A stretch of DNA of 64,000 nt from IMGVR_UViG_3300027899_000001:124001-188000; one strand, 5' to 3'; shown: positions 21,622 through 53,667, counted from the first letter of the stretch. The notes: generated by a model not told the origin, from the letters alone. Program-made: numbers and translations.

Positions 21622-22773
21622 TTATTTATTTTCATTCATTTGTTGTGAAAACTCATCAAATGTAATAATTTCATGTTCAAACTTTTTTGTAGTTATAGCG
21701 TTTTGATTTCCCTTTTCTTTTTTCGTTTTAAACGGAGATGTTTTTCCACCTTTTAACATTTTACCTATTGTAGTATTATCATTGTGTGGATTAGTGTTCT
21801 CTTCTTCTATCTTTTTAGGACGTTTTTTAGCAACAGTTTTCCTTTTTTTCTTAGGATTTGGTGATTGTGTATATGGTTTCTTATTTATAGAATTACCCCA
21901 ATTATCTCCAGAGCCTGTTGATGATGTACCTGTCATTTGAGCTCCAGTTGTAGCTGCCATAGAAGCTGGTGCTCCTGTACCCATTCCTGGTGTAGCTCCG
22001 GCTCCCATCATTTCACTTACTGTTCGTGCTTTCATATTTGAATTTTTATTTTCATTTTTTTGAACTATTACATTTCTTAAAAATCTTGATTGAAAAAGTT
22101 CATCTTTATCTCCTTTTCTAATCGTAATATATCTTCTATAATATCTATTTAATATTTGCCAATATTCTTCCTTTAAAATAGAACTCTTATCTTCCTTATC
22201 TGCTATAATTTCATTTAAATCATCTACTTTCAATATATGAGGAGCAACTTCATAAAGCCATTCAGCAAAATCCTCCCAAGTATCAAAAGTTCTTTTAGCA
22301 TATACGCCTATTCCTAAATCTTTAATAGGATCTGAATGTTCTGTAAATTTTTCATTTACACTTGAGTTTTGTTTTTTCTTTAAGATTTTTAAAAATTCTT
22401 TAAAACTATTATAAGTATTAGGAGCTAATAGTTTTTCAGATATTATTTGTTTGCTAATTTGTTTTAAATCTAAGTCAATTCTATCTAATAAAAAGAATGC
22501 CTGATCAAAATATTTTTTCCAAATTAAATTTATAAAAAGATGTCTTCCTTGTTCTTCTTTATCAAATTGATTAGTAGACATAAAGTAATCTGCAAAATCA
22601 TATCTATTATGAACTAAAAGATATCGTAATGTATAGTATCCTCCTGCATTTTCATCATTTTTTAACCCATGATATCCTCTATATTTGTCTAAAGCCCGTT
22701 TCATTCCAATACCCATATCATGAACAGGATCAGTATCTTCAACAAACTTTTCATTTATTTTAAGCTTTTGCAT
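21622..22773 (-). CDS. Tag family polyprotein, 2 modules plus a Gly/Lys-rich tail
   Basis: INEKFVEDTDPVHDMGIG and VNEKFTEHSDPIKDLGIG; ATG at 22773. Confidence 0.8.
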   Translation of the reverse strand: MQKLKINEKFVEDTDPVHDMGIGMKRALDKYRGYHGLKNDENAGGYYTLRYLLVHNRYDFADYFMSTNQFDKEEQGRHLFINLIWKKYFDQAFFLLDRIDLDLKQISKQIISEKLLAPNTYNSFKEFLKILKKKQNSSVNEKFTEHSDPIKDLGIGVYAKRTFDTWEDFAEWLYEVAPHILKVDDLNEIIADKEDKSSILKEEYWQILNRYYRRYITIRKGDKDELFQSRFLRNVIVQKNENKNSNMKARTVSEMMGAGATPGMGTGAPASMAATTGAQMTGTSSTGSGDNWGNSINKKPYTQSPNPKKKRKTVAKKRPKKIEEENTNPHNDNTTIGKMLKGGKTSPFKTKKEKGNQNAITTKKFEHEIITFDEFSQQMNENK

Positions 22774-23308
22774 TTTCAATCAATCTTGTTTTTATGCCTC
22801 TTATAGATTGCGCTAGTCTAATATTAGCAGGATCATCATCAAAGAAAGTAATTTCATCGTATTTAGTCATAAGTTTACGAAGAATTTTACGCTTTTCTTC
22901 TGCAATGTTTATATCTCCTTTATCATCACCTATTGTAATAATATGTTCCAATTCAATCTCAATTCCGTGTTTCTTTAGAAATTCATAGATATAAGATTTA
23001 ACTGCTTTACTTCTTGCTGTAAGTATGTAAATATCTGATGTGGTTCTATCTTCTCTAATTGCATTACTTATATTTCTTAATATAGGCCATGCATTATGTT
23101 TCTTAGCATTAAGTATTAAATCACCATTCACGAAATCAGAAAAATCTAATTTATCACCGGGTTTCTTAATATAAAAATTATATTCTTTAGGTGTTATAGA
23201 AGTGACAAATGCTCCCCTATTGTAAATATGAATTTTTGCATCTGTTTTGACAAGAGTCTCATCAAAATCAAAAATGTACGCTTTCTTATATATTGTCTGT
23301 GCTCTCAT
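22760..23308 (-). CDS. HAD-superfamily phosphatase
   Basis: FDFDETL, ILTAR, K, FFDDD. Confidence 0.8.
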   Translation of the reverse strand: MRAQTIYKKAYIFDFDETLVKTDAKIHIYNRGAFVTSITPKEYNFYIKKPGDKLDFSDFVNGDLILNAKKHNAWPILRNISNAIREDRTTSDIYILTARSKAVKSYIYEFLKKHGIEIELEHIITIGDDKGDINIAEEKRKILRKLMTKYDEITFFDDDPANIRLAQSIRGIKTRLIENAKA

Positions 23309-23310
23309 AA

Positions 23311-23784
23311 TTAATAACGTAATAAAAATTGTTTTGTGTTAAATTGAATGACAGCTTCTATCGTTCCTATAAATTGTTTCATATTATCTTCAGATTTATA
23401 TTCATCTTCATTATATTCATATTGAAATGTTCCTATTTTTCCAGCACTTGTATTATATAATTTAAATATACATATTTCTTCATGTGCTCCCGATGTTCTA
23501 AATTTGCTATTATGTATTAATCTTCCTTTTCTTATAACATTTCTAATTTCACTTATATTAGCAACTCTATTATTTTGTGTATCAGCAAGAAAATATACAT
23601 GACCTAAAGGCAAGTTAAACGCTTTTAATACTCTTTGCACCCAATCATTATCCATGCCGCCCATTTTACCATTAAATAATTCTGCACTTTTTACCTGTTC
23701 TCTTAGTTTTTTTAATCCTATACCCATATCATGAACTGGATCTGATTCTTCTCTAAACTTTTCGTATATATATTGAGCTTTCAT
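23311..23784 (-). CDS. Tag family, 1 module
   Basis: IYEKFREESDPVHDMGIG; payload resembles that of 46207. Confidence 0.8.
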   Translation of the reverse strand: MKAQYIYEKFREESDPVHDMGIGLKKLREQVKSAELFNGKMGGMDNDWVQRVLKAFNLPLGHVYFLADTQNNRVANISEIRNVIRKGRLIHNSKFRTSGAHEEICIFKLYNTSAGKIGTFQYEYNEDEYKSEDNMKQFIGTIEAVIQFNTKQFLLRY

Positions 23785-24137
23785 TCTTCTATAAAAATTT
23801 TTTCATCTCCTGTAGAAAAATATTCATTATCTTCTTCACTAATAAACGCAAAATTTGAAGAGGTTTCAATAGATTTATTTGTAGTATCATCTGTAAAATG
23901 AAATCTAACAGATTTTACAGGAAATGTATAATTTTTTTCTGGACTATTCCATCCACCTTTATGAAATTTTCCTGATACTTTTTTTCCTTTGAATTGTGAT
24001 ATCCAATCTCTCCATTCTACATAAGCAACTCCTAAAATATCATGGTGTACTTTTCTAGGACTTACTCCCCCAATTCCCATGTCATGAACAGGATCTGATT
24101 CTTCGTCAAATTTCTCAAATATACCATGTGCTCTCAT
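23781..24137 (-). CDS. Tag family, 1 module
   Basis: IFEKFDEESDPVHDMGIG; payload resembles module 2 of 45560. Confidence 0.8.
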   Translation of the reverse strand: MRAHGIFEKFDEESDPVHDMGIGGVSPRKVHHDILGVAYVEWRDWISQFKGKKVSGKFHKGGWNSPEKNYTFPVKSVRFHFTDDTTNKSIETSSNFAFISEEDNEYFSTGDEKIFIEE

Positions 24138-24151
24138 TACATGTATTTTAT

Positions 24152-26275: not shown

Positions 26276-27370
26276 CTATTTTAAATTAAAATATTTAAAA
26301 TATTCATCTTTAATCTTCCAATAATATATAATATTATCTATTGTGTTTTTATACCCATACACCTTTTTAGTTAAACCCGGTTGAAAAATAAGATACTCTA
26401 ATAATCCCATTTCTTTTAATATATCAGTTATATGTTGCAAAGCATCTTTATGCGGCATTTCTTTTCCAAACAAAATAAGATGTCGTTGTATATCAAACGC
26501 ATATTGATATGATCCAAAATGATTTTTATTTACCTGCCATAATTTTCCTAATTTATTTTGTATAACATGTTCAATACCAATTCCCAAATCAGTAATTGGA
26601 TCCGATTCTTCAGAAAATTTCTCTTGTAAATATGGCTTTTTGGGCTTAAATGGTTTTACTTCTATATAAAAAAATTTCTTTAGCGCATAAATAACTTTAT
26701 CAAGTTCTATCTTATCGCCCCTTCTAATGATTAAATCATTTATTGTATCTTCAAATATTTTTTGTATATCTTCTTGATTATCAATATCTTTATTTACAAT
26801 ATGTTTTAAAACTTTAAAAACGGCAAATGCTTCATTTGTAAATTTTTCATTTCCATAATAATGTATAGCAGACTCAATTGAATTTATTCCACCTTCTCTT
26901 TTAAGTTCCTTTTCCCAGAATTTTTTTATGCCTATTCCTAAATCAGCGATTGGATCTGATTCTTCTTCGAATTTTTCGTATACTTTTCGTCTTTTTGGCT
27001 TAACAGGATTTATAATTATATGAAAATATTTATCTAAACACTCAGCTATTTTTTTAAGATCTATATATTCATCACTACTATATCTATAATATCTGTTTAT
27101 AGCTTTTTCATATTGATATTGAAGATCTTTTGATTCAATAGAACCTTGTTGTATAACACCTTCTAATACTAAATATACTACATAAATTTCTTCGCCGTAT
27201 TTATCTGTTCCATAATACTCTTTTGATAATGTTCCGACACCCTTTCTGCCCATATCATAATAGGCAGTTCTCCATGATTTTAATAGATATTCTTTTCCAA
27301 TACCTAAATCATGGACAGGATCTGTCTCCTCAGAAAATTTTTCGTTTATATGTTCTTTAATTATCTTCAT
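26276..27370 (-). CDS. Tag family polyprotein, 3 modules (start MKIIKEHINE at 27370)
   Basis: Three tag copies; modules 1 and 2 resemble each other. Confidence 0.8.
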   Translation of the reverse strand: MKIIKEHINEKFSEETDPVHDLGIGKEYLLKSWRTAYYDMGRKGVGTLSKEYYGTDKYGEEIYVVYLVLEGVIQQGSIESKDLQYQYEKAINRYYRYSSDEYIDLKKIAECLDKYFHIIINPVKPKRRKVYEKFEEESDPIADLGIGIKKFWEKELKREGGINSIESAIHYYGNEKFTNEAFAVFKVLKHIVNKDIDNQEDIQKIFEDTINDLIIRRGDKIELDKVIYALKKFFYIEVKPFKPKKPYLQEKFSEESDPITDLGIGIEHVIQNKLGKLWQVNKNHFGSYQYAFDIQRHLILFGKEMPHKDALQHITDILKEMGLLEYLIFQPGLTKKVYGYKNTIDNIIYYWKIKDEYFKYFNLK

Positions 27371-27626
27371 GAGTTTTTGCATAACGATCATGGCCAGCTT
27401 TCCATGCTTTATGCAATGGTGTTCCCACATTTATACTATGTGAAATCGTTTTTCCTGCTAATCCAGATAAAAACATTTTATTTATAGTTTTACTTTTATC
27501 CAATTTTTCTGGATCTACTTTAGCATAATAATTATATACTTTAGTTAACTGTGCCTCATTTTCATTAAGAAATTCATCAAGAGATTCTGCTATGAAATTT
27601 TCTTTTTTATTAACATTTTTTTCCAT
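27357..27626 (-). CDS. Small hypothetical protein with ESLDEFLNE leader
   Basis: Leader shared with 21389..21610. Confidence 0.6.
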   Translation of the reverse strand: MEKNVNKKENFIAESLDEFLNENEAQLTKVYNYYAKVDPEKLDKSKTINKMFLSGLAGKTISHSINVGTPLHKAWKAGHDRYAKTHEDN

Positions 27627-28629: not shown

Positions 28630-29091
28630 TTAAGTTGTTACTTTTCCGCCTACGTTACATTTTTCACGCACCGTTTCTTCTGTAAATATTGTTTTATTAT
28701 CTTGACATAAAAAATCTCCTGATACTTCTTTTGGACAATAATCTAAAGATTTTAATCTATTTCCGCTACAATCAAAATATCCTTTAACGATCTCAGGACA
28801 TCCTCGTAATGTTGTCATTTTTGTTTCAGAACAATCAAATGATTTACTTTCTTTAAAATTAATATAATCTGGAAAGTTTCCATTCATTTTTACTCTTCCA
28901 AATTTTACATCGTCGTTTAATATTAATGTGTAATCTGAATTAATTTTAATATGTTTATTAAATGTAATTTCATCTACTTTAAATTTTGCAAACCACTTTT
29001 TAATTAATGTTGGTAATCCCACATTTAAATCCCATATAGGATCGCTTTCTTCTATAAATTTTTCATTAATATATTCTCTAACAATATTCAT
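28630..29091 (-). CDS. Tag family, LRR-like payload
   Basis: INEKFIEESDPIWDLNVG; FDCSGNRLKSLDYCPKEVSGDFLC. Confidence 0.8.
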   Translation of the reverse strand: MNIVREYINEKFIEESDPIWDLNVGLPTLIKKWFAKFKVDEITFNKHIKINSDYTLILNDDVKFGRVKMNGNFPDYINFKESKSFDCSETKMTTLRGCPEIVKGYFDCSGNRLKSLDYCPKEVSGDFLCQDNKTIFTEETVREKCNVGGKVTT

Positions 29092-29114: not shown

Positions 29115-29468
29115 CTATTTTTTCCTCATATGTTTTTTTACATAGTCAAATGAGTGTTGATGTCCACCTGTTATTAGATATAAAATTATATCGTTATCTT
29201 TTTTACCATCAATCGCCATTTTTAACACGCCCTCTTCTATTTTAGCTTTTTTATCATCTATTAAATATTTAACAAGTTTAAAATTATTGGCAGAAACTGC
29301 CATCCATAAAAAAGTTTCGTCTGTAAGTGCACTTATTGCTTTATCTGATAAGTGAAATCGTTCTTTAGCTAATTTTATAAGTTGGTTTTTCATTCCTATA
29401 TTCATATCTTCAATAGGATCTGATTCTTCTTTAAACTTTTCATTTATATGTTCCCTGACTAATTTCAT
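29115..29468 (-). CDS. Tag family, ankyrin-like payload
   Basis: INEKFKEESDPIEDMNIG; LWMAVSANNFKLVKYLID. Confidence 0.75.
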   Translation of the reverse strand: MKLVREHINEKFKEESDPIEDMNIGMKNQLIKLAKERFHLSDKAISALTDETFLWMAVSANNFKLVKYLIDDKKAKIEEGVLKMAIDGKKDNDIILYLITGGHQHSFDYVKKHMRKK

Positions 29469-30225
29469 ATTCTCACTTTATATTTTACAAATAAATCGTA
29501 ATATTGTTCAGGTATACTATAGTAACGATCTTCATCCATCATATCTTTAGGAATTGTCATCATATAAACTCCGGCTTCTGTAACTCCCCCATATTGCGCA
29601 TTACATCTATGTTTCATCATAGTAATGCTTCCTAATTGTCCAACATCATATTTATCAAATTTTACAAGAGTTTCTGTATTGAATCCATCTTTATAGTATT
29701 TTTTACCACCAACTGTAACAGGAATTTTATCCATAAATCCTATAAAAACATAAATATTATTTTCACTTTCTTCTTTTATTTGTTTTCTTGTTCTTCCTAA
29801 TTTTTTAATGTATATTTGTGCAGTAGATAAATCATGAGATCCTGTTTGATGGCAAGGATTATTCCAATTAATATCATCTAATCCATTTTAATAATTTCCA
29901 ATATTTCATCTTTATCTACATTGTTAGCAACAGCTTCATCTATAATATCTTTTATATCTTTTTTTGTATAATGCACATCTTTTAAAACTTGTGCCTTTTC
30001 TTTAGGAAAATGTTTTATTTGAACATCAATAAAGTCTTCTTTAGATTTACTTTTCCATCCTTTTTTGAAGAATGTATAATCATCACGGAAATCAACATCT
30101 TCTTCAGTTAATCCTATTTTCTTAAGATCAGCAAGAATTTGATTCTTTTTTCCTATATTTAAATCTTGAATCGGATCCGATTCTTCTTTAAATTTTTCGT
30201 TTATATGTTCTCTTACTTTTTTCAT
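29465..30225 (-). pseudogene. Tag family gene interrupted by a 1-nt frameshift near 29885 (track ORFs 29878..30225 and 29465..29734)
   Basis: The frame of the 29734 ORF stays open upstream to ATT AAA A|AT GGA; one extra A gives ...EIIKNGLDDINW...GFMDK. Confidence 0.65.
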
Positions 30226-31040
30226 TAATATGCGCTAAATCTTAATTTTCCTTTTATTTGACAATATTTTCTAACTGACGTACGAAAAGTGGGTTTACCG
30301 TGTGCTGCGTTATAAAAAATTACATAATCACCATCCACTATTTTTGGTCCATTTATTTTAATAGTTCTTAAATTATCAAAACAACAAGCAAATCTTCCAC
30401 GTATATAATTAAATTTTATATAACTGGGAAGCCTACTTAAATCTTCATAAGATATATCTATATCGTCCTTTGAATCTAACGTTAAATCATTATTTATTAT
30501 AAAATCTCCGCCTTCAACTACTTTTCGTTTTGTAAATTCTTTTATCCAATCATTAATTTGTCTTGGCAATCCTATACCCAAATCATAAATAGGATCTGAT
30601 TCCTCAACAAATTTTTCAGCTAATATATTTTTTTCTTTTAATTTTCGTATACCCATCAAAAGATCATTACACGTTTCATCTAATCCTCTTTTTCTAAGTT
30701 CTTTAAGCGTCTGTTTAACATCAGCGCCATTGTCTATTAAAAATTTGCATCCTTTCCAATTATGATCGTATGCACAATTACCTAAAAAATATCCATAAGA
30801 TTTAGAATGTGATGCGTTTATATCTACTAATTTAGAATCTAATAAAAATTTTGCAAAAATATATTCATTATTACTTAAGCATATTTCAAACATAGAATCG
30901 TAATGTTTACCATTTACTAACTCACGTCTGCCTTTTTTTATTATATAGTCTTCAATTTTAGCTAACATTCCTATACCAAGATCACGAATGGGATCTGATT
31001 CTTCAGCAAATTTTTCGTTTATATGTTCTTTTACAATCAT
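30225..31040 (-). CDS. Tag family polyprotein, 2 modules (ankyrin-like, LRR-like)
   Basis: Two tags; CKFLIDNGADV; LPSYIKFNYIRGRF. Confidence 0.8.
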   Translation of the reverse strand: MIVKEHINEKFAEESDPIRDLGIGMLAKIEDYIIKKGRRELVNGKHYDSMFEICLSNNEYIFAKFLLDSKLVDINASHSKSYGYFLGNCAYDHNWKGCKFLIDNGADVKQTLKELRKRGLDETCNDLLMGIRKLKEKNILAEKFVEESDPIYDLGIGLPRQINDWIKEFTKRKVVEGGDFIINNDLTLDSKDDIDISYEDLSRLPSYIKFNYIRGRFACCFDNLRTIKINGPKIVDGDYVIFYNAAHGKPTFRTSVRKYCQIKGKLRFSAY

Positions 31041-32843: not shown

Positions 32844-33194
32844 TTATATTTTTTTAGTAATTGGGTGTTCTTTTTTTCTTTGGTGATCAATAATATATTG
32901 TCGTAAAGAATGGTACTGAGGAGAAGCTTTTTCTCTATTAATAGTTATATATTGTTCACAATATTCTTGTAACATTTTTGCATAATCAGTAGTAATAAAA
33001 TGAGTAGAATCAGTAGATATTAATAACATTCTATTATCAACTTTACATACTATTGGAATAATATCATATAGCCATTTAACAAGATCCTCGATAGATTTAA
33101 AATCACGCACGTGAAAAACACCAATACCCATTGTTTGTATAGGATCGGGATCTTCTAAAAATTTCTCCCCTAAATATTCCCTAACTTTTTTCAC
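32844..33194 (-). CDS. Tag family (degenerate tag), 1 module
   Basis: LGEKFLEDPDPIQTMGIG; RDF...WLY payload class. Confidence 0.7.
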   Translation of the reverse strand: MKKVREYLGEKFLEDPDPIQTMGIGVFHVRDFKSIEDLVKWLYDIIPIVCKVDNRMLLISTDSTHFITTDYAKMLQEYCEQYITINREKASPQYHSLRQYIIDHQRKKEHPITKKI

Positions 33195-42822: not shown

Positions 42823-43662
42823 TTATAGTTGTGCGATAATGCGTAACGCGTAATCCTTTTCTGAACCTTTTGGTGTATCTACTTCTCCTGATTTTACAGA
42901 CACCATAGATCTAAATACACCCTTAACTCTATTAAGAGAACGAGGATTTTGAAGGTTATTTTTAATATCAGAAACAAGAGATTCAAAGGATTTATTAAAA
43001 TAATAATCACTTAAAAGAGATTCTACTATACTCCATTTAGTTGTCTTCCAAATATCTACACTATCTAATGTCTTAAAATCTGGTGTTAAATCTACTCTAC
43101 GAAGAGTTAACGCTGAGGAACTTAGATTAAATTCATATTCTTGATTCTTCGCAGGTTTAGGGAGATTTGGAAATTTATTCAAAACTCTTGGATTTTCTAA
43201 TACTACAGTTTTTATTAAACCTAACATAAGTCCTTGTTTAATTGCCGGGAGATTTAAAAATTCTAATTTAAAATTAGTTTCATCTGAAGATAAAGAGATT
43301 ATATTATCAATCTGAACAAATCCGTTTCCATTTTCTATAGGATATAATATCGTAATAATTTCTCCAGAACTTAAGAATTTTTTTCCATTATATTTAACAC
43401 TCTTAAAAGGAACTATTAAATCATCAGGAAGAGATGATACAAATTCTCCAAAATCTTTTTTAACTCTAATCTTATCGTTAGATTTTAATTCAACTATTAA
43501 ATCTATATCTCCAAAATCAGTTTTATTGGAAGTGTTATATGACCCAGATATCACTGAAGTTTTATAATTTCTATATTCAGATAACACATTATCTTGATAA
43601 TGTTGAATTGTAGATTCTACATCTTCTCTTGAAATTCTATTTCCGCCGGCGCTCCCGCTCAT
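42823..43662 (-). CDS. Pol-beta-superfamily nucleotidyltransferase
   Basis: SGS...FGDIDL...VQID. Confidence 0.7.
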   Translation of the reverse strand: MSGSAGGNRISREDVESTIQHYQDNVLSEYRNYKTSVISGSYNTSNKTDFGDIDLIVELKSNDKIRVKKDFGEFVSSLPDDLIVPFKSVKYNGKKFLSSGEIITILYPIENGNGFVQIDNIISLSSDETNFKLEFLNLPAIKQGLMLGLIKTVVLENPRVLNKFPNLPKPAKNQEYEFNLSSSALTLRRVDLTPDFKTLDSVDIWKTTKWSIVESLLSDYYFNKSFESLVSDIKNNLQNPRSLNRVKGVFRSMVSVKSGEVDTPKGSEKDYALRIIAQL

Positions 43663-45563
43663 TTTCTGAATTTATATAAGTTTGAATCTTCTGGTAAAAA
43701 TTTACCTTGTAATCCTAATCTATCTTGATTTTTAATCCAATACTCCTGTAACATAGTTGGAATATCTGTTCTTGTCGAATCTAATATCTTTAAGTAAATA
43801 TCGTAAATCTTATATAACTCAGATTGCGAAAGGTTTTTAACAAGAAACTCTCGAAGTTTATAAAAGTTATTAAGTGTTTCTCGAGTTAAAGTATCTCTAA
43901 AATTATATAACTTATTTAATAATTCTATTACTTCAGTAGGATTAGTCGCATCATATTCTGTAGTTTCTGAATTATATACTCCAGAACCATGACGGAAAGT
44001 TCTTTTCTTATTTGCGAATAGCGCTACTATTAACTGAGTTCTATGTAATCCTTTCACATTACCCTCATAAGATTCTGAGTGATAACTAAAAGTTAACCAA
44101 TCCATGTTTCCAATATTCACATCTATCTGAACATCTTTACCAACTTTCTGTCCTTGTTCATTATATTGTGGAAAACAACAGAATATAGTTCCAGCGCCAG
44201 AGTTCTTAGGATCAGCGAGTAACCCTTTAGCGATTAGTTTATCTACAATTATTTTCACCATTGAACCTAACTTAAGTTGTTTTTCAGACGCTGAGCGAGC
44301 GCGTTTCTTCTTAAGTTCGTATACTTCTGTGAATTCTTCAGGACTTATTCCCCAATCATCTAATTTAACTTCGTTATTCTCAAATATAGTATCTTCACTA
44401 AGCGCTAAATCTATATCTCCTGAAATATCTTTCTTTCCCGCAGATCCGAGTAATTTAAATTCGAAATCAACGTTTGGAAAAATAAAATTAAGTTTCTTTG
44501 TGAATCTATCCATAGTTGGTGGAATATCTTCTCGTTTAATAGGTCCTGTACCATCAAAAATATTACCCCCTTCAAATAATCGAGGAGTAAAAGATTCTTT
44601 AATATTTTGTGTATTTTCTTTAATTGCGCGAGAAATTTTATTATATACGCATTTTTCATTTTCACAATAATACGCCCAATAACTACTATCTTCACGAATT
44701 TCATATTTAAATCTTCTAAATGATGAATCATCATATTCTCCTACTATATTTTCTATGTTATATTTTACTCCCTTTACTTTATAATAAGCGCTCTTTTTAT
44801 GTATAGAAAATTCTTCCTTTTTTGGAATATAAATTTTACCTCCAAATTTTTGTTTAAGTTTATATAGAGCTGCGTGTAGAGGATTTCCTATACCTAAATC
44901 ATGAATAGGATCTGATTCTTGTGTAAATTTCTCGTTTACTGATTCTGTAATAACGTTTTTAGTCATATCCCAAATAGTTTCTACTATCGATTCTCTTATT
45001 CCGGGATAATTGGTTTTAAAGTTTCCATAATCATCGTTTAAAATATCTTGACGTAATATAGTTCCAGATATTATTTCTCCTTCATTTTCATCTGTACGAC
45101 CTTCATATCTAATTGGAGATATATCTATCGGAAGTTCTATAACTTTAACATCTGGGTGTTTTAGATGATAATATTTTCCGGTTTCAAGATGATCTTTAAC
45201 GAATTTAGTAACTCTGCCATAATCAGTATCTTTTTCTGAACCACCCATCGCATAAACTCCCGGTTGCGCTGCTTCTATAAACTTATACGCTGCCAACACA
45301 GGAACTTTAACTTCTTCTACACTAACATTATGTAAATCTTCTAAAAGTAATAAAGCGATCTGTACAGCCTCTACTGGAGTTATTCCATTACGAACGCCTG
45401 AACCTATAAAAATTCTAACTTCTTTAACTTTCGGATTTTCTACATAGCGCCTAATCATATTTACATGACCTATGTGCATAGGTTTAAAACTTCCAGGTAA
45501 TAACACGGTTATTCCTTCGTTTATATTTTCGTTTAACCAACTTATATATGATGAAAATTTCAT
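43659..45563 (-). CDS. Three-part protein: HxGH cytidylyltransferase-like, tagged module, pol-beta nucleotidyltransferase
   Basis: PGSFKPMHIGH; ESVNEKFTQESDPIHDLGIG; LGSAGKKDISGDIDL...VQID. Confidence 0.75.
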   Translation of the reverse strand: MKFSSYISWLNENINEGITVLLPGSFKPMHIGHVNMIRRYVENPKVKEVRIFIGSGVRNGITPVEAVQIALLLLEDLHNVSVEEVKVPVLAAYKFIEAAQPGVYAMGGSEKDTDYGRVTKFVKDHLETGKYYHLKHPDVKVIELPIDISPIRYEGRTDENEGEIISGTILRQDILNDDYGNFKTNYPGIRESIVETIWDMTKNVITESVNEKFTQESDPIHDLGIGNPLHAALYKLKQKFGGKIYIPKKEEFSIHKKSAYYKVKGVKYNIENIVGEYDDSSFRRFKYEIREDSSYWAYYCENEKCVYNKISRAIKENTQNIKESFTPRLFEGGNIFDGTGPIKREDIPPTMDRFTKKLNFIFPNVDFEFKLLGSAGKKDISGDIDLALSEDTIFENNEVKLDDWGISPEEFTEVYELKKKRARSASEKQLKLGSMVKIIVDKLIAKGLLADPKNSGAGTIFCCFPQYNEQGQKVGKDVQIDVNIGNMDWLTFSYHSESYEGNVKGLHRTQLIVALFANKKRTFRHGSGVYNSETTEYDATNPTEVIELLNKLYNFRDTLTRETLNNFYKLREFLVKNLSQSELYKIYDIYLKILDSTRTDIPTMLQEYWIKNQDRLGLQGKFLPEDSNLYKFRK

Positions 45564-46207
45564 TTAGTTATATAATATTTTTCGTATTTTTTTATAGTAT
45601 GTTTAATTCCAATAGTATCTATCAAGATTACTTCTGTTCCCATTCCGTAACTAGCTGAATCTGCTATTTTAAATGTTAGAGATTTTTTACTTCCTTCAAA
45701 AACTCCAGTTATTGTTTTTCCCGGCAAACCTTTTATAAAATATAACCACTCTTCATAACCATCATCTGCATTTATAATACTTCTAATAGTGTTTTCAGAA
45801 AGTTCATAAAAATTTACAACATCTACTCCTATTCCCATACTACTAACAGGATCAAATTCTTCTTCAAATTTTTCGTTAACTTTTTTATATAATTTATCTT
45901 TAACAAGTTGTTTAAATTCATCAACCCATAATGTATCAACTCGCATACCTCGTATTGTTACATATTTGCGTATAAATGCCATTATTTGCACATAATAATC
46001 ATGATTTATAACACATTCACCCGGATCTTTTAAAATATCTTCTATTTTTTCAAGATGTAATAATATTGCCGCATTTTTATATAACCATTTATGAAGATCT
46101 AGATAATTATTAAAATCTCTTTTCATATATAATCCTATGCCCATATCTCTTATAGGATCAGAATCTTCTACAAATTTCTCGTTAATATGTTCTCTAACTA
46201 CTTTCAT
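45560..46207 (-). CDS. Tag family polyprotein, 2 modules
   Basis: INEKFVEDSDPIRDMGIG; VNEKFEEEFDPVSSMGIG. Confidence 0.8.
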   Translation of the reverse strand: MKVVREHINEKFVEDSDPIRDMGIGLYMKRDFNNYLDLHKWLYKNAAILLHLEKIEDILKDPGECVINHDYYVQIMAFIRKYVTIRGMRVDTLWVDEFKQLVKDKLYKKVNEKFEEEFDPVSSMGIGVDVVNFYELSENTIRSIINADDGYEEWLYFIKGLPGKTITGVFEGSKKSLTFKIADSASYGMGTEVILIDTIGIKHTIKKYEKYYITK

Positions 46208-46644
46208 TAAAATTTTCTCTCATGTAATTTTGTATGATACGCCATTTGAATATCACCTAAATAATAAATATAATCACTGCGTGACGCTTCTGTTAGTGTA
46301 GCAATTTTTCCAAATTCTGTAATAAATCCTTTAAATAATTCTTTTTTATTATTATATAATTTTCTTATTTTTAATTGTTTTTTATTATTTACAGTAAATT
46401 GTTTTATTTCTTCTTTCATAAATCCTTCAAATTCACCTTCATCACCTATATAATACACATCTGATAAAGGAAGTTCAAAAAAATTATGTATTAATTTCTT
46501 TTCATGTGGACTTAAAACTAATGATCTGTTAACACCATGTTTTTCAATTTTTGGTGCGATACTGTATATTCCTATACCCATATCATGGATAGGATCAGAT
46601 TCTTCTTTAAATACTTCGTTAATATATTCTCTTACTAATTTCAT
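46207..46644 (-). CDS. Tag family, 1 module
   Basis: INEVFKEESDPIHDMGIG. Confidence 0.8.
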   Translation of the reverse strand: MKLVREYINEVFKEESDPIHDMGIGIYSIAPKIEKHGVNRSLVLSPHEKKLIHNFFELPLSDVYYIGDEGEFEGFMKEEIKQFTVNNKKQLKIRKLYNNKKELFKGFITEFGKIATLTEASRSDYIYYLGDIQMAYHTKLHERKF

Positions 46645-47474
46645 TTTTGTAGTGGAGCATTTAATTTCATTGATGTAATTACATCGCCTTTTACTTCACA
46701 ACGGCTTCTAATCTCTTCTTCTGTAAATTCTACATCGTTACCAACTATTACATAATTTCCACCAATATATTTTGGCATTCCTTCTAAAGATTTCAAACGA
46801 CATGTATAAACTGCAAAATTTCCACCAACGTGTCTAGGAAAACCTTTTAATGTTGTTATTTCTCCTAAAATTATTACGAATCCTAATTTTGTTTTATTAA
46901 ATTGAATATAATCTGGAAAATCTTGAAAATTTTTGCCTATAGTATAAATTTCATCATAAAGGTCAATAGTTCCGTCTTGTCTTATTTTATATCTTTTTAT
47001 CTCATGTTCTTTTAACCATTTCTTAATTTTAGGAATTACACCAATACCTAAGTCTTGTACAGGATCAGAATCTTCTATAAATTTTTCATTTACAGATTCT
47101 TTTAATTTGTCTATTTCTTCTGGTTTAGGAATCTCAAAATGTTCTAAAAACTTTTTTCCTGATAATGTTAAATATTCATCTCCGACAAACACAAAATCTG
47201 GGAACCTGAACCATTTTGGAAATTTCTCATATGTAACTAAATTTAATTTAATTTTTCCTTTAGGTGTAAAATTTATTTCTTTAATTACACAATAAGAATC
47301 AGGAGTAATATGAAAATTAGAAACAGGATATTGAGGAACTCTAGGTTTTATACTTTTTTTACATCTAATAATATCACCGCGCTTTAGTTTATGAAATATA
47401 CCAATTCCTAAATCATAAATAGGATCGCTATCTTCAACAAATACTTCATTAATATATTCTCGTACTATATTCAT
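46641..47474 (-). CDS. Tag family polyprotein, 2 modules (second LRR-like)
   Basis: Two tags; ITTLKGFP..V.G, LKSLEGMP. Confidence 0.8.
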   Translation of the reverse strand: MNIVREYINEVFVEDSDPIYDLGIGIFHKLKRGDIIRCKKSIKPRVPQYPVSNFHITPDSYCVIKEINFTPKGKIKLNLVTYEKFPKWFRFPDFVFVGDEYLTLSGKKFLEHFEIPKPEEIDKLKESVNEKFIEDSDPVQDLGIGVIPKIKKWLKEHEIKRYKIRQDGTIDLYDEIYTIGKNFQDFPDYIQFNKTKLGFVIILGEITTLKGFPRHVGGNFAVYTCRLKSLEGMPKYIGGNYVIVGNDVEFTEEEIRSRCEVKGDVITSMKLNAPLQK

Positions 47475-47947
47475 GTAGTTCTTATCTTATCTTTTGCTAT
47501 TTTACAATATTTCTGTACGTATTCTCTTGTAAATCTTTTTTTATTACCACCACACATAAATTTTTTGCCAATAATTTCTGGACAATATTCTAATGAAGTT
47601 AATTTATTAAATCTGCAATCAAAATCGCCAGTTACTATTTTAGGACATCCCCTAAGAGTTGTCATATTACAATTACATATTATAAATTCTCCATCTATTT
47701 TATTAAAATTTATATACTCTGGAAAATTTCCGCAATTATCTGGAAGCGCAGTAAATCCTTGGCAATCTATAGTGCCATCGTTATTTATAGTGTAATTTCT
47801 AATTCCATCACACTGATTATTATTAGATATTCTATTTATCATTCCTATCCATTTTTCAATTTTGTGTATTATTCCTATACCCATATCTTGTATAGGATCT
47901 GATTCTTCTGAAAATTTTTCGTTGATATGTTCTCGGACTATGTTCAA
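47471..47947 (-). CDS. Tag family, LRR-like payload
   Basis: INEKFSEESDPIQDMGIG; MTTLRGCPKIVTGDFDC. Confidence 0.8.
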   Translation of the reverse strand: MNIVREHINEKFSEESDPIQDMGIGIIHKIEKWIGMINRISNNNQCDGIRNYTINNDGTIDCQGFTALPDNCGNFPEYINFNKIDGEFIICNCNMTTLRGCPKIVTGDFDCRFNKLTSLEYCPEIIGKKFMCGGNKKRFTREYVQKYCKIAKDKIRTT

Positions 47948-47957
47948 AGCGATTTTA

Positions 47958-48002
47958 TTTTATATATTTAAGAAAAAAGGAGATAATTTATTTTATCTCC
48001 TT
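47958..48002 (-). promoter_or_regulatory. Terminator fused to a late-promoter variant
   Basis: AAGGAGATAA/TTATCTCCTT hairpin, T tract, AAATATATAAA. Confidence 0.6.
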
Positions 48003-48011
48003 GTGTTATTA

Positions 48012-49214: not shown

Positions 49215-49239
49215 AATTAATGTATTTAAATATTCTATG

Positions 49240-49901: not shown

Positions 49902-50552
49902 TTATGATTTATATGCAACTTTAAGCGCTTTATACTTTAATTTTTGTTCTTCTTTAATTTTATATCTTTGCATTCCTATTTTAGTGCCTTCTTTTATTCT
50001 TTCTATTTGTTCTAGTGTGCGTTTTTTACCTCTGTGTGAATCGTTTAATTTTTTTTGATGTTCTTCACTTCGTTTTCTTCCTTTCATGTATTCACTATGT
50101 TTTTTATTTTGTTCTTCTGAATGAATTTTTCCTTTATGGGATTTTCTATTTTTTTCAACTGTTTCTAAAGAATGTTTTCTACCTAAATTAATTATACTTA
50201 TTTTTTTTCTTGTTTCTTCTGACACTGGAATTAATGATTTTAATTCTCTAGCATATGCATAATCTTTTGATGATATATTATGTTTTCCAGATTTATCCCA
50301 AGTCATTCTACAAAATGCATTTGCTATTTTTCTATTTCTTTTATAAATATATGTTAACAATTTATGACATAGATAATGTTCTCTAGCAGTTAATAAAACT
50401 AAATTTTCTTCGTCATTACTTCCACCTAAACATTTAGGTAATATATGATGTTTTTCGTAATAAACATAATTTGCATTATCTTTTTTTAATTTAATTCTAT
50501 TTTCAGATTTTGTTTTCTGAATTATAGAATCATAAACTTTTTGATGATTCAT
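49902..50552 (-). CDS. HNH homing endonuclease with NUMOD3 repeats
   Basis: EKHHILPKCLGGSND; SEETRKKIS, GRKHS. Confidence 0.85.
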   Translation of the reverse strand: MNHQKVYDSIIQKTKSENRIKLKKDNANYVYYEKHHILPKCLGGSNDEENLVLLTAREHYLCHKLLTYIYKRNRKIANAFCRMTWDKSGKHNISSKDYAYARELKSLIPVSEETRKKISIINLGRKHSLETVEKNRKSHKGKIHSEEQNKKHSEYMKGRKRSEEHQKKLNDSHRGKKRTLEQIERIKEGTKIGMQRYKIKEEQKLKYKALKVAYKS

Positions 50553-50554
50553 TT

Positions 50555-50973: not shown

Positions 50974-52164
50974 ATGAAAATAGTACGAGAACATATAAAT
51001 GAAAAATTTTCTGAAGAATCTGATCCTGTACATGATTTAGGCATAGGCATAATACATGCTATTGAAAAATTCTGTGATAAACACAGAAAAGTGATAATGC
51101 CTACTTATGAGTGTGATGAAAAAGATATTATGCTATTAATATGTGTTGATAGAAAAAAGCATGATTATGTAGAAGATTTATTAAAATTAGGAGCTAATGT
51201 ACATACAAGCGCTGGAATACATCTGGGTAATGAAGATCTACCTGTTAGATACGCAATATGGAACAATGATTATGAAATGACAGAATTATTATTAAAATAT
51301 GGAGCATCTATAGAAAACGCATTTGATGAGGATGTTCTTGAACTTATAGAAACTGGAGATTATATGGGTGGAAAAAAAAGTAAAGAATTAATAGACTTAG
51401 TAAAACAACATTTAGAAAAACCAGTAAATGAAAAATTTTCTGAAGAATCAGATCCTATATATGATTTAGGAATAGGAATAATTACAAAACTTAGAAAATT
51501 TTTAAAAGATCATCACTGCGATAATTTTGATTTACGTTATAAACCTGATCAAGATAAAGCTCTTTCTTTATGTGTTAAAACCAATACTCCAGATTTTATA
51601 CAGTATTTAGTATCATTGGGAGCAGACCCTAATTTTAGTCCTGAAGATAAAGATTTTGGGTTATATTTAATGAATGCTGCATACGTAGAAGATTGGGAAG
51701 TTTGTAAAGCTTTAGTTAATAGCGGAGCAGATTTAGATAAAACTATAACATGTTCGATAGATAGACAGACTCCGATAACTTTAAAAAATCTTGAAAGATT
51801 TAAAGAAATGATAGAAAATCCTATAAATGAAAAATTTTCAGAAAAATCAGATCCTATTAAAGATATGGGTATAGGTTTATATACAATAAGAAATTTTGAA
51901 AATTTAAATGAAATAGCAGAATTTATCATATCTATAATGCCATATATTTTAAAAACACATAAAATTCCTGAAGATATTATACATTCTGAGGCTTTTATAC
52001 TAAAACAAAAATATATTAAACCTCTTGATAATTATATTTATAAATATATTAGATTAAATAATGAAGAAATAACATCAGCAATAGATTATAAATTATTTGA
52101 AAATATGTTAAGTATTTTAGCAAAAAGAGGCTTTAAATATCCTAAAACTAAATTCATACATTAA
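50974..52164 (+). CDS. Tag family polyprotein, 3 modules (ankyrin, ankyrin, RxF-class), inverted orientation
   Basis: Three tags; LLKLGANV, LLKYGA, LVSLGADPN. Confidence 0.82.
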   Translation: MKIVREHINEKFSEESDPVHDLGIGIIHAIEKFCDKHRKVIMPTYECDEKDIMLLICVDRKKHDYVEDLLKLGANVHTSAGIHLGNEDLPVRYAIWNNDYEMTELLLKYGASIENAFDEDVLELIETGDYMGGKKSKELIDLVKQHLEKPVNEKFSEESDPIYDLGIGIITKLRKFLKDHHCDNFDLRYKPDQDKALSLCVKTNTPDFIQYLVSLGADPNFSPEDKDFGLYLMNAAYVEDWEVCKALVNSGADLDKTITCSIDRQTPITLKNLERFKEMIENPINEKFSEKSDPIKDMGIGLYTIRNFENLNEIAEFIISIMPYILKTHKIPEDIIHSEAFILKQKYIKPLDNYIYKYIRLNNEEITSAIDYKLFENMLSILAKRGFKYPKTKFIH

Positions 52165-52246
52165 CAAAAAATTAACAAAATTAACAAAACCCTAACGCTG
52201 ACATCCATATAACTGAAGACTAAAGCCCTCTAGGAATGCAGATACT

Positions 52247-52888
52247 CTAGACTAAACACTGAATTTCCTCTTTTTTCAATATAGTTTGTATTACCCAATA
52301 CGCATCTACAAGATCATCTACATGTTCTATCCAATTCCTTCCTCCTTTTTTCATGAAAATTTCTCGTTTTTCAAACAATTTTAAACGAAACTTACAATGA
52401 GGTGGTCCTGAACGAATAAATTCGTCGATCATCTCAGATTTTCCCATTCCTTTTTTTGCACAACCAGCTATACTTTTAATTGTAATAGGAGAATAAGTAT
52501 ACATATGATCTAATGAAACATATTGGGAAAGTTCATTCATCAATATATATTTGTAACCACCTAATTGTATTCCAGAATCTCCTCCCGATCCATAAGATAA
52601 CCCTTCAAATGCGAGATAGGTATCTCCATTAAAGTAACACTTAAGTGATTCAGTGATAAGATTTGAAAGGTATCTTGCGTTTTCTACTTCCCAACGCATT
52701 TTGGAAGTTAATCCTAATTCATGTTCTTTATTATCTATACGATCAATTATAGTTATACCAGATTCTCTAAAAGTTTTAATAGATTTGTCAGAAATTGAAT
52801 ATGGCCAACTCATAAAAGAATATTTGCCATTTGAAAAGATGCATGCCGCTGGTTTATTTATTGAAAAATCGAATCCAATTATATTCAT
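52247..52888 (-). CDS. RuvC-like Holliday junction resolvase
   Basis: IIGFDFS, FEG, SP.TIK, DDLVDAYW. Confidence 0.75.
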   Translation of the reverse strand: MNIIGFDFSINKPAACIFSNGKYSFMSWPYSISDKSIKTFRESGITIIDRIDNKEHELGLTSKMRWEVENARYLSNLITESLKCYFNGDTYLAFEGLSYGSGGDSGIQLGGYKYILMNELSQYVSLDHMYTYSPITIKSIAGCAKKGMGKSEMIDEFIRSGPPHCKFRLKLFEKREIFMKKGGRNWIEHVDDLVDAYWVIQTILKKEEIQCLV

Positions 52889-53667
52889 TTATCTTTAAGT
52901 GTTAATGCGTGAAAATCATGATAGTCAGGATAATGATAAGTAAGTATGTTAACTAATCTTACTGCACATTTTTTACGTATATCTTCAAATGTAAAATCAG
53001 GAATAATATCAGTATAAATAGTTAAAGTTCCTCCTACATAATCAGGCAAATATTTTAATTGGTTTTTAGTTTTAAATACACAAGAAAATTGTCCTGTTAT
53101 TTTTCCAAATTTAATATAAGACGGCAAGTTAGTATTTTCTAAAGAAGAAAAATTTACATATTCTGCATTTATCTTTAAATCTTTACTTATATTTTCGCCT
53201 TTAATAAAACCACGTTTTCTTAATTCTGTTACAAAGGAATCAATTTTTTGCCTAATGCCTATACCCATATCATGAATAGGATCAGAATCTTCTGTAAAGG
53301 CTTCATTTAATGGATCTACATTGATATAAAAATGTTCTTTAAGAACTTCTGCAACTATTTTTCTAGCTTTTAACATATCTTTTTTTGTGTCATTTATATG
53401 AGAAAATGCTCGGCATGAATTATTGAAAGCAATTTGAACTGGTATATTTCTAATAGCATCTGAAATAGTAAATGACGCTATAGCAGCATATTTATGTTTA
53501 TAATAAAAAGAATATTTAGAAAAAAATTTTTCTACAAACTCTTCGGGATTTTTATTTATTTTTTCATTTTCAATTTTCCAAAAATTTATTAAACCTATTC
53601 CCAAATCTTTTATTGGATCGCTTTCTTCTGTGAAAATTTCGTTTATATGTTCTCTAACTAATCTCAT
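52885..53667 (-). CDS. Tag family polyprotein, 2 modules
   Basis: INEIFTEESDPIKDLGIG; LNEAFTEDSDPIHDMGIG. Confidence 0.8.
   Translation of the reverse strand: MRLVREHINEIFTEESDPIKDLGIGLINFWKIENEKINKNPEEFVEKFFSKYSFYYKHKYAAIASFTISDAIRNIPVQIAFNNSCRAFSHINDTKKDMLKARKIVAEVLKEHFYINVDPLNEAFTEDSDPIHDMGIGIRQKIDSFVTELRKRGFIKGENISKDLKINAEYVNFSSLENTNLPSYIKFGKITGQFSCVFKTKNQLKYLPDYVGGTLTIYTDIIPDFTFEDIRKKCAVRLVNILTYHYPDYHDFHALTLKDK

What the first reader, a model, noticed from the sequence alone, without database searches (positions are those of the whole stretch)
21622..53667. Payload modules are shuffled at the tag boundary among single genes and polyproteins
Seen: the same payload classes recur in different positions and combinations. 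(a) RxF...WLY class: 21622 m2, 32844, 45560 m1, 50974 m3. (b) W...GK..G.F class: 23781, 45560 m2. (c) FxLPL..VY..GKI class: 23311, 46207. (d) DII..K class: 14030, 46641 m1. (e) class ending F.I...P: 26276 m1 and m2, 52885 m1. (f) IK.EY..F-ending class: 12298 m2 and m3, 11835, 26276 m3. (g) ankyrin. (h) LRR-like. Inference: the roughly 45-50 bp tag-coding DNA also serves as a homologous-recombination handle that fuses, splits and swaps cassettes, like the constant-junction/variable-tip logic of polymorphic toxins.
Basis: partly seen in the sequence, partly recalled or inferred. Interest (0 to 1): 0.8.

Follow-up and report, generated by a model that had tools for sequence, protein, structure and literature searches.

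The report
Tagged cargo cassettes in huge phage
A 405-kb T4-type phage encodes 88 small protein modules that all start with the same 23-residue tag; related phages show these modules being gained, lost, fused and swapped with breakpoints concentrated in the tag, which is probably a head-targeting and protease-cleavage signal, not DNA kept for recombination.

Summary
The window lies in a complete 405-kb T4-type huge phage. It carries 88 copies (33 in the window) of a 23-aa tag: a leader ending in [ILV]-x-E, then the core K-F-x-E-E-S-D-P-I-x-D-[ML]-G-I-G. Each tag heads an 80-150-aa payload, in single genes or in polyproteins of 2-6 modules. Payload classes a, b, c, ankyrin and the LRR-like class are confirmed. 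Classes e and f are partly confirmed; d is borderline.

In relatives the module order is not conserved. Of 166 homology breakpoints between closely related contigs, 32% fall inside the 69-nt tag, against 4.8% expected. Two well-resolved cases put the crossover inside the tag core.

The "DNA handle" idea is only partly supported:
- Synonymous sites of the tags are at codon-usage equilibrium (0.665 observed, 0.653 expected).
- Tag pairs typically share only about 10 exact nucleotides.
- No paralogous payloads in this genome exceed 49% identity.
- Other routes also act: small indels in the leader, recombination inside ankyrin repeats, whole-gene indels and microhomology deletion.

The tag is a disordered protein-level motif, absent from Pfam, PHROGs, GenBank phages and cellular genomes. 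It most likely acts like the T4 capsid-targeting sequence plus a gp21-type cleavage site for packaged cargo. That function is inferred, not shown.

The parts
11835..12338 (-). Tagged gene, 1 module (tag 12231-12299); class f payload
   Evidence: payload z 17 against 12298 m3
12298..13590 (-). Polyprotein, 3 tags (13489-13557, 13078-13146, 12739-12807); m3 is class f
13557..14033 (-). Tagged gene (tag 13965-14033), LRR-like solenoid payload
14030..14470 (-).
21622..22779 (-). Polyprotein with 2 tags (22705-22773, 22306-22374): an unclassified module, then class a, then a tail that copies the major capsid protein N-arm and ends in a basic stretch. Its ATG overlaps the end of the HAD-like gene 22760-23308.
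22760..23308 (-). Untagged HAD-like hydrolase. In relative G001 it is fused in frame to three tagged modules; here a 10-nt length difference in the leader splits the two.
23311..23784 (-). Tagged gene (tag 23716-23784), class c
23781..24137 (-). Tagged gene (tag 24069-24137), class b
26276..27430 (-). Polyprotein, 3 tags (27296-27364, 26930-26998, 26576-26644): class e, class e, then an f-like module. The whole gene is absent from the same slot in G001.
28630..29091 (-). Tagged gene (tag 29017-29085), LRR-like
29115..29468 (-). Tagged gene (tag 29394-29462), ankyrin
29878..30225 (-). Tagged gene (tag 30151-30219). In three relatives its homologue is fused to the homologue of untagged ORF 29465-29734.
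30225..31040 (-). Polyprotein, 2 tags (30969-31037, 30570-30638): ankyrin then LRR-like
32844..33194 (-). Tagged gene (tag 33120-33188), class a. The same slot in G001 holds a different, LRR-like gene.
43659..45563 (-). Two-domain enzyme with an internal tag (44886-44954) and an ~82-aa payload inserted in its linker, flanked by a diverged repeat of the linker. L021 has the same two domains joined directly with no tag. G001 has the tag, another payload and a different C-terminal domain.
45560..46207 (-). Polyprotein, 2 tags (46133-46201, 45827-45895): class a then class b. G001 has class a alone in this slot.
46207..46644 (-). Tagged gene (tag 46570-46638), class c
46641..47474 (-).
47471..47947 (-). 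Tagged gene (tag 47873-47941), LRR-like. Its closest homologue in G001 (64% aa) sits on the other strand in a different slot.
50974..52164 (+). Polyprotein, 3 tags (50980-51048, 51409-51477, 51808-51876): ankyrin, ankyrin, class a
52885..53667 (-). Polyprotein, 2 tags (53593-53661, 53257-53325): possible class e module then LRR-like
53664..54440 (-). Untagged ORF with a leader-only junction (K-E-S-L-N-E at residue 103). The homologue in G002 begins at that junction.
55800..56357 (-). Tagged gene (tag 56289-56357), unclassified payload
58148..58618 (-). Tagged gene (tag 58544-58612), ankyrin

Best explanation
The window is part of a complete 405-kb huge phage with T4-type head genes.

The tag is a disordered protein-level linear motif with two parts. 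The first is a leader ending in [ILV]-x-E, the specificity of T4-type prohead proteases. At N-termini the leader is a 10-residue peptide that shares M1, K2, E6, I8 and E10 with the T4 capsid-targeting sequence. The second part is a 16-residue acidic core, K-F-x-E-E-S-D-P-I-x-D-[ML]-G-I-G.

Tags head small cargo modules (ankyrin, an LRR-like solenoid, several new folds) and also sit between enzyme domains. My reading is that tagged proteins and polyproteins are directed into the prohead, cut at each leader by the S77 protease, and delivered with the DNA as a large, fast-evolving set of host-interaction proteins.

The repertoire evolves by cassette turnover between related phages:
- modules and whole genes are gained, lost and replaced;
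- open reading frames are fused or split by small indels in the leader;
- modules are duplicated in tandem;
- crossovers fall disproportionately in the tag-coding DNA.

The tag attracts crossovers because it is the only sequence shared by unrelated cassettes and the only place where a junction keeps both partners functional. This recombination role is a by-product of a protein-level constraint. It is not a property the DNA is selected for.

Shown: the tag census, the payload classes, non-conserved module order, breakpoint enrichment, absence of DNA-level constraint, and tag disorder in models. Inferred: head targeting, cleavage and injection.
For: Tag and genome:
- 88 tags with a clean score gap.
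- 668 unique tags in the family, with [ILV]-x-E in 97.5%.
- 1,617 protein clusters carry the tag among 1.84 billion representatives, with up to 10 tags per protein.
- The genome is complete, with Gp23 and Peptidase_S77 hits.

Link to the T4 head pathway:
- The invariant E is residue 10 in at least 26 ORFs and residue 8 in 16.
- The T4 targeting sequence is MKTYQEFIAE (PMC8442874). Its processing residues are 8 and 10, and gp21 cuts after L/I-X-E (PMC9026906).
- The capsid protein has L-N-E followed by A-A-M-G-G. Its alignment to T4 gp23 keeps the register, residue 89 to T4 mature residue 26.
- ORF 21622-22779 carries a 31-aa copy of the capsid N-arm, 71% identical, E 6e-11.
- Leader-only junctions lie between enzyme domains in 53664-54440 and in P0042.
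- The tag has pLDDT 45-60 in two confident models.

Evolution of the arrays:
- Relatives differ slot by slot.
- Breakpoints are enriched in tags, 32% against 4.8%.
- Crossovers lie inside the tag in two pairs.
- A fused gene in G001 is split here by a 10-nt length difference.
- Codon identity is 0.665 against 0.653 expected.
Against: - No proteomic or biochemical data exist: cleavage, packaging and injection are all inferred.
- In T4 the targeting peptide lies before the cut and is removed. Here the most conserved part lies after the presumed cut and would stay on the mature module, so the analogy is incomplete.
- The five residues shared with the T4 sequence could be chance.
- Tagged genes are scattered among replication genes, not clustered with head genes.
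- The complex prediction gave no answer.
- Breakpoint mapping is limited by conservation of the tag itself, because BLAST blocks extend through it. It also comes from relatives: no close relative of this genome was found.
- Selection for in-frame junctions could produce the enrichment without any role for homology.
Confidence: 0.6

Rival explanations
1. One reading: the tag-coding DNA is itself a homologous-recombination handle, and its conservation is partly maintained for that role, as at the constant/variable junction of polymorphic toxins.
For: - Breakpoints are enriched in tags.
- In L004/L049 one module is present or absent, with the crossover in about 32 nt where the two flanking tags are 30/32 identical.
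- In L048/L050 identity ends about 40 nt into the tag.
- Adjacent tags are slightly more alike than others, 0.697 against 0.666.
Against: - Synonymous sites show no excess identity: 0.665 against 0.653 here, 0.620 against 0.582 and 0.672 against 0.650 in two relatives.
- The median exact match is 10 nt, and only 4 of 528 window pairs reach 25 nt.
- There is no concerted evolution of tags and no recent exchange inside this genome.
- Several events use other junctions.
Confidence: 0.25
2. Survivorship only: recombination is illegitimate and random, and junctions at tags are simply the ones that keep both modules in frame and functional. Homology plays no part.
For: - Many breakpoints (102 of 166) lie elsewhere.
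- L012/L063 is a 412-bp deletion with 3-4 nt of microhomology, starting in the last tag codon, that truncates the ORF.
- The L086/L112 junction lies in the non-conserved leader.
Against: - The two best-resolved events fall in the most identical stretches of the tags.
- Enrichment is about 7-fold even at internal tags.
- The frame-breaking L012 deletion shows that non-functional products are also visible in the data.
Confidence: 0.3
3. The arrays arose by tandem duplication and divergence alone, with stop-codon gain or loss for fusion and fission. No exchange occurs between unrelated cassettes.
For: - Same-class adjacency is enriched, 26 observed against 16 +/- 3.5.
- 26276 m1/m2 and 50974 m1/m2 are same-class neighbours.
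- The HAD fusion and split is a small indel.
Against: - 144 distinct ordered class pairs occur in 222 adjacencies. Ankyrin is followed by 19 classes and class a by 21.
- In L048/L050, flanks 99% identical enclose non-homologous payloads.
- The closest homologue of 47471 lies on the other strand in another slot of G001.
Confidence: 0.05
4. The tag is a nucleic-acid element, such as a site for a recombinase or a regulatory RNA or DNA motif, and the peptide is incidental.
For: It is a repeated ~69-nt unit found 88 times, almost all on one strand.
Against: - Conservation is at the amino-acid level only, and codon choice matches genome usage.
- The tag is always in frame inside ORFs.
- The motif is kept across 668 variants with freely varying third positions.
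Confidence: 0.02

Closest known systems
T4 internal proteins (IPI-III, Alt) with the capsid-targeting sequence, and the polymorphic internal-protein locus of T-even phages
   Same: - The head machinery is T4-type (gp23-like capsid protein, S77 protease).
- A short conserved N-terminal leader ends in L/I-x-E with E at residue 10.
- Highly diverse cargo shares only the leader (PMC3012670, PMC9026906).
- The cargo repertoire varies between relatives.
   Different: - There are 88 copies, against a handful in T4.
- Tags are also internal, giving polyproteins of up to 6 modules here and 10 elsewhere.
- An extra 16-aa acidic core lies after the presumed cut and has no T4 counterpart.
- Cargo is ankyrin, solenoid and novel folds, not small basic proteins.
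- Packaging and cleavage are untested.
Ejection and inner-body proteins of phiKZ-like giant phages (201phi2-1, SPN3US), processed by a gp21-related protease
   Same: Many head-internal proteins in paralogous families are cut after Glu at a short motif and delivered to the host (PMC9026906, PMC7411985).
   Different: Those phages use S/A-X-E and have no shared long tag or tag-delimited polyproteins. This phage has no detectable relation to them beyond the protease family (S80 hit E 2.5e-8).
Polymorphic toxin systems (CdiA-CT, Rhs), with a constant region, a conserved junction motif and a variable tip (from my own knowledge)
   Same: A short conserved junction separates exchangeable C-terminal units, and cassettes are displaced and replaced between strains.
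   Different: No toxin or immunity domains were found. The tag is N-terminal to each unit and repeated in series. There is no large constant delivery domain. This is a phage, not a bacterial secretion system.
Encapsulin cargo-loading peptides (consensus D-G-S-L-G-I-G-S-L-K-G; T. maritima G-G-D-L-G-I-R-K; PMC7925596)
   Same: A short disordered peptide with an L-G-I anchor directs diverse cargo into an HK97-fold shell. The tag ends in D-[LM]-G-I-G.
   Different: Encapsulin peptides are usually C-terminal and single. The resemblance covers 4-5 residues and may be chance. Binding could not be assessed.

Membership tests
T4-type capsid-targeted internal proteins (CTS cargo) | The genome encodes a T4-type prohead protease (gp21, Peptidase_S77) and a gp23-type capsid protein | tested here: met
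   PF03420 61 bits and PF07068 102 bits in the own genome
T4-type capsid-targeted internal proteins (CTS cargo) | A short N-terminal propeptide ends in L/I-X-E | tested here: met
   [ILV]-x-E in 97.5% of 668 tags. E is residue 10 in at least 26 ORFs and residue 8 in 16.
T4-type capsid-targeted internal proteins (CTS cargo) | The propeptide is cleaved by the prohead protease and the protein is found inside the head | not testable with these tools
   Needs virion proteomics or a protease assay. The complex prediction gave no answer.
T4-type capsid-targeted internal proteins (CTS cargo) | Sequence homology of the leader to the T4 sequence MKTYQEFIAE | tested here: inconclusive
   5 of 10 residues are shared (M1, K2, E6, I8, E10). 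This is too short for statistics (PMC8442874).
Polymorphic toxin systems | A C-terminal toxin domain with a cognate immunity gene downstream | tested here: not met
   No toxin or immunity family in Pfam or PHROGs for 20 tagged proteins. One sub-threshold Imm40 hit, 13.7 bits against a cut-off of 25.
Polymorphic toxin systems | A conserved junction at which variable units are exchanged | tested here: met
   Breakpoints are enriched about 7-fold in the tag
Encapsulin cargo-loading peptides | The peptide binds the inner face of an HK97-fold shell protein | tested here: inconclusive
   Complex prediction returned 'no answer'
Ankyrin repeat (class g) | Pfam Ank families above the gathering score | tested here: met
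   PF00023 38.6 bits and PF12796 38.2 bits on 50974-52164
Leucine-rich repeat (class h) | A Pfam LRR match or an LRR solenoid fold | tested here: inconclusive
   No Pfam LRR hit. PDB Foldseek hits are LRR proteins but at E > 1. AlphaFold DB clusters named pentapeptide or LRR match at E 1e-5, TM 0.56.

The most novel reading that the evidence does not exclude
The acidic core ending in D-[LM]-G-I-G is a cargo-loading peptide that docks on the inner surface of the T4-type (HK97-fold) capsid or its scaffold, as encapsulin targeting peptides do. The leader is the protease site that frees each module. On this reading, a clade of huge phages turned the head into a programmable capsule that injects dozens of interchangeable effector modules, encoded as tag-delimited polyproteins.
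Probability: 0.2. Interest if true: 0.9.

Novelty: new variant of a known kind. Interest (0 to 1): 0.75.

Why it matters
If the tag is a head-targeting and processing signal, this phage clade packages by far the largest and most modular cargo repertoire known. This genome has 88 modules, and metagenomes hold more than 1,600 tagged protein clusters. That would extend the T4 internal-protein idea to polyproteins and to ankyrin and solenoid host-interaction domains.

It would also give a ready-made sequence label for finding injected phage effectors in uncultured huge phages, and a natural example of a peptide tag that could be tested for loading foreign proteins into large capsids.

Independently of function, the data show how a protein-level constant motif becomes the preferred seam for cassette exchange.

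Tried and rejected
- Read laying on window 43600-49500. Only the source run is available, as Logan contigs. All listed joints connect tag positions at the phage's own depth (~38) and are paralogy artefacts. It gives no evidence on population variants.
- The search for homologous proteins with 32844-33194 found only the query itself. That protein has a divergent tag, so few words were shared.
- Complex prediction with the protease domain, the capsid protein and a tag peptide returned no answer. I do not use it as evidence.
- Foldseek against PDB and the ESM Atlas for class a found no significant fold match.
- The look-up of encoding contigs for 46207-46644 returned only the source sample, so no near-identical relative exists with a different context.
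- tblastn of 50974-52164 against GenBank phages and the tag pattern against 185,579 species genomes gave no match.
- The weak Pfam DUF5928 hit (22.3 bits, below the cut-off) was not followed up.
- A nucleic-acid-level role for the repeat was considered and rejected by the codon analysis.
Full report
**What the window is.** The window is bases 124001-188000 of a single 405,016-bp contig with 28.8% GC. IMG/VR classes it as complete, with direct terminal repeats. It encodes a T4-type major capsid protein (Pfam Gp23, 590 aa) and a gp24-like protein. It also encodes a 781-aa protein whose N-terminus is a Peptidase_S77 (gp21) prohead protease. The window's family-B DNA polymerase is closest, at 36% aa identity, to an uncultured 462-kb phage and to the Prevotella Lak phages. 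This is therefore a huge phage with T4-type head morphogenesis, from a freshwater metagenome.

**The tag.**
- A regular expression, and then an HMM, find 88 copies of a 23-aa tag in 64 ORFs. Scores are at least 19 bits for these and at most 5 bits for everything else.
- Thirty-three copies lie in the window, between 11835 and 58618.
- Over 668 unique tags from this phage and its relatives, the conserved columns are: 6 = I/L/V (98%), 8 = E (98%), 9 = K (92%), 10 = F (98%), 14-17 = S-D-P-I, 19 = D, 20 = M/L, and 21-23 = G-I-G.
- Payloads between tags are mostly 80-150 aa.
- Twenty-two window ORFs carry tags, and nine of them carry 2 or 3. One, 43659-45563, has a tag in the middle of a two-domain enzyme.
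- No Pfam or PHROGs family covers the tag. GenBank phages give no tblastn match. The degenerate DNA pattern matches nothing in 185,579 species genomes.
- A profile search of 1.84 billion cluster representatives finds 1,617 tagged proteins. Of these, 601 have E at or below 1e-10, and one protein has 10 tags.
- The motif strings occur in no relevant paper of the searchable library.

**The payload classes.** I cut all ORFs at the tag and clustered the payloads. I then ran iterative profile searches over 678 modules of the family.
- Classes a, b and c are confirmed, b and c reciprocally.
- Ankyrin is confirmed by Pfam.
- The LRR-like class is a well-defined family. Its AF2 model is confident (pLDDT 88.5). 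It matches AlphaFold DB clusters annotated pentapeptide or leucine-rich repeat at E 1e-5 and TM 0.56, but has no Pfam LRR hit and no significant PDB hit.
- Class e holds for 26276 m1 and m2; 52885 m1 is recruited from one side only.
- Class f holds for 11835 and 12298 m3. 12298 m2 and 26276 m3 resemble each other but are not linked by profiles.
- Class d is borderline.
- Class a is a new small alpha/beta fold with no structural neighbour.
- Positions vary for ankyrin and class a, which occur first, middle, last and alone. The LRR-like class is terminal in 68 of 72 cases, and several smaller classes are terminal only. Shuffling is therefore constrained, not free.

**Is the tag a DNA element?** It is not.
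- At columns where two tags have the same amino acid, they use the same codon in 66.5% of comparisons. Genome-wide codon usage predicts 65.3%.
- Two relatives give 62.0% against 58.2%, and 67.2% against 65.0%.
- Mean nucleotide identity is 67%.
- The median longest exact run is 10 nt, the 95th percentile is 18 and the maximum is 39. Random coding segments share 3 nt in register and 7 nt in any register.
- Tag similarity is unrelated to payload class (0.662 for the same class, 0.667 for different classes). Neighbouring tags are slightly more alike, at 0.697.
- No two payloads in this genome exceed 49% aa identity.

The constraint is on the peptide, there is no concerted evolution, and the genome shows no recent internal exchange.

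**Relatives.** The degenerate tag pattern retrieves contigs from many freshwater and sediment metagenomes. Together with this genome they make 162 non-redundant sequences carrying 778 tags. Contig G001 (39 kb) is syntenic with window 14000-51000, with core genes at 62-83% aa identity, yet it differs in almost every tagged slot:
- The four tagged genes downstream of the ribonucleotide reductase gene are replaced by other classes.
- The three-module gene 26276-27430 is absent.
- G001 has extra tagged genes where the window has none.
- 45560-46207 (class a plus class b) corresponds to class a alone.
- The best homologue of 47471-47947 lies on the other strand in another slot.

Five further orthologous loci show the same turnover. 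A more distant relative of 323 kb, with the flanking core gene at 55% identity, has no tag, no class a and no LRR-like module at all. Across the family, 222 within-ORF adjacencies give 144 distinct ordered class pairs. Same-class neighbours are modestly enriched, 26 against 16 +/- 3.5, which points to some tandem duplication.

**Where the breakpoints are.** I took all blastn blocks of at least 200 nt and 88% identity between different contigs. I kept block ends lying more than 120 nt from both sequence ends.
- Of 166 unique ends, 53 (32%) fall inside the 69-nt tag and 10 within 15 nt of it. The shares of sequence occupied are 4.8% and 2.1%.
- Internal polyprotein tags account for 29 ends against 2.3% expected, and N-terminal tags for 24 against 2.5%. 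The effect is therefore not just gene-boundary mosaicism.
- Blocks arriving from upstream end in the core. Blocks arriving from the payload side end in the leader. This places the exchange within the conserved core, but conservation of the tag limits the resolution.

**Resolved cases.**
- L004 against L049: one ankyrin module of 387 bp is present or absent. The single tag of L004 matches the upstream tag context on its 5' side and the downstream tag on its 3' side. The switch lies in about 32 nt where the two L049 tags are 30/32 identical.
- L048 against L050: the flanks are 99% identical. Identity runs through the first ~40 nt of the tag, then 5 differences fall in the last 30 nt. Unrelated payloads follow, 551 bp against 256 bp.
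- L086 against L112: a segment of 1.13 kb spanning several tagged modules is missing, with the junction in the leader.
- Counter-examples also exist. A 412-bp deletion with 3-4 nt of microhomology starts in the last tag codon and truncates the ORF. A crossover lies inside ankyrin repeats. A homing-endonuclease insertion is unrelated to tags.

**Fusion and fission in the window.**
- The HAD-like gene 22760-23308 and the two-tag ORF 21622-22779 are a single ORF in G001, where the HAD domain runs straight into the tag. In the window a 10-nt length difference in the leader creates an overlapping stop and ATG.
- 43659-45563 is a nucleotidyltransferase domain, a tag, an ~82-aa payload, a diverged repeat of the pre-tag linker, and then a second domain. 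L021 and P0042 have the two domains joined directly with no tag. G001 keeps the tag but has another payload and a ligase-like C-terminal domain.
- Leader-only junctions (E-S-[ILV]-N-E, or I-T-E-S) occur before enzyme domains without the core. Examples are 53664-54440, whose homologue in relative G002 starts exactly there, and P0042. The leader and the core are therefore separable elements.

**What the tag most likely does.**
- In two confident AF2 models the tag is unstructured, with pLDDT 45-60.
- The leader fits the L/I-X-E specificity of T4 gp21 (PMC9026906).
- At N-termini the invariant Glu is residue 10 in at least 26 ORFs, 8 in 16 and 9 in 4. The common form, M-K-[ILV]-V-[RK]-E-H-I-N-E, shares M1, K2, E6, I8 and E10 with the T4 capsid-targeting sequence MKTYQEFIAE (PMC8442874). 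In that sequence residues 8 and 10 govern processing (PMC9026906).
- The phage's own capsid protein has L-N-E followed by A-A-M-G-G at residues 41-48. T4 gp23 is cut before A-E-I-G-G; that T4 sequence is from my memory, and its register agrees.
- ORF 21622-22779 and its G001 homologue end with a copy of the capsid N-arm from that site onward, 22 of 31 residues identical, followed by a lysine-rich tail. This suggests a head-internal location.
- T-even internal proteins are described as diverse anti-defence proteins that share only the targeting sequence (PMC3012670).

I therefore read the tag as a head-targeting and processing signal, and the polyproteins as precursors cut into modules in the prohead. 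This is inference. The role of the acidic core is unknown. It lies after the presumed cut and ends in D-[LM]-G-I-G, which recalls the L-G-I anchor of encapsulin targeting peptides (PMC7925596). The single complex prediction gave no answer.

**Verdict.** Cassettes are indeed fused, split and swapped, with breakpoints concentrated in the tag, and some crossovers lie in stretches of tag-tag identity. But the tag DNA carries no signature of being maintained for recombination, homology is short, other mechanisms contribute, and the direct evidence comes from relatives, not from this genome. The closest known system is the T4 capsid-targeting sequence with its variable internal proteins. This is a greatly expanded, polyprotein-forming variant with an additional conserved core.

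Noticed in passing
window 21622-22779 (aa 264-294), against genome 304806-306575: The C-terminal part of this tagged polyprotein copies the N-arm of the major capsid protein (22 of 31 identical, E 6e-11), starting at a V-S-E site that mirrors the capsid L-N-E site. A lysine-rich tail follows. The G001 homologue has the same tail.
   Followed up: partly
window 43659-45563: A tag plus an ~82-aa payload sits in the linker of a two-domain enzyme and is flanked by a diverged ~17-aa direct repeat of the linker. Relatives have the two domains joined with no tag, or a different C-terminal (K-x-D-G ligase-like) domain.
   Followed up: partly
P0098 and P0139 (metagenomic proteins): The protein's own N-terminal leader (M-S-F-Y-P-R-L-F-E) is repeated word for word about 650 aa downstream, directly before a tag core. 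It looks as if a second gene copy had kept only its leader.
   Followed up: no
window 29465-29734 and 29878-30225: The untagged 89-aa ORF is the C-terminal part of a longer tagged payload in three relatives (241-260-aa single ORFs). In the window the two pieces are separated by 143 bp.
   Followed up: partly
window 14522-17986, 10065-10898, 8983-10014, 37833-38408, 39847-40533, 49902-50552, 54597-55538, 56992-58137: The ribonucleotide reductase and a GMP-reductase-like gene appear to carry intein or Hint-like insertions. At least six HNH/GIY-YIG-like homing-endonuclease ORFs are scattered among the core genes. One GIY-YIG gene is an indel between relatives L033 and L050.
   Followed up: no
window 24214-26199 and 34199-35284: A 661-aa extremely acidic (D/E-rich) protein is conserved at its N-terminus in relatives. 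On the + strand lies a signal-peptide protein with a long Tyr/Gly/Ser-rich low-complexity region.
   Followed up: no
genome 306661-309003 and 309697-310901: The S77 prohead protease is the N-terminus of a 781-aa protein with a ~550-aa extension, possibly a fused scaffold. Two tagged genes (3 tags) lie immediately upstream.
   Followed up: no
window 48067-48181 and 49420-49499: Low-depth contigs (about 3x, against 38x for this phage) with about 85-90% identity show that a related strain co-occurs in the source sample.
   Followed up: no
G006 = IMGVR_UViG_3300035698_018106 (locus L075): A 323-kb relative with the same core synteny has no tag and no class a or LRR-like module. The whole tag-plus-cargo system is confined to a subclade.
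   Followed up: partly
window 18056-19531: The family-B DNA polymerase ORF has only 491 aa (exonuclease and part of the polymerase). It matches the Lak-phage genomes over 90% of its length, which suggests a split polymerase gene in this group.
   Followed up: no
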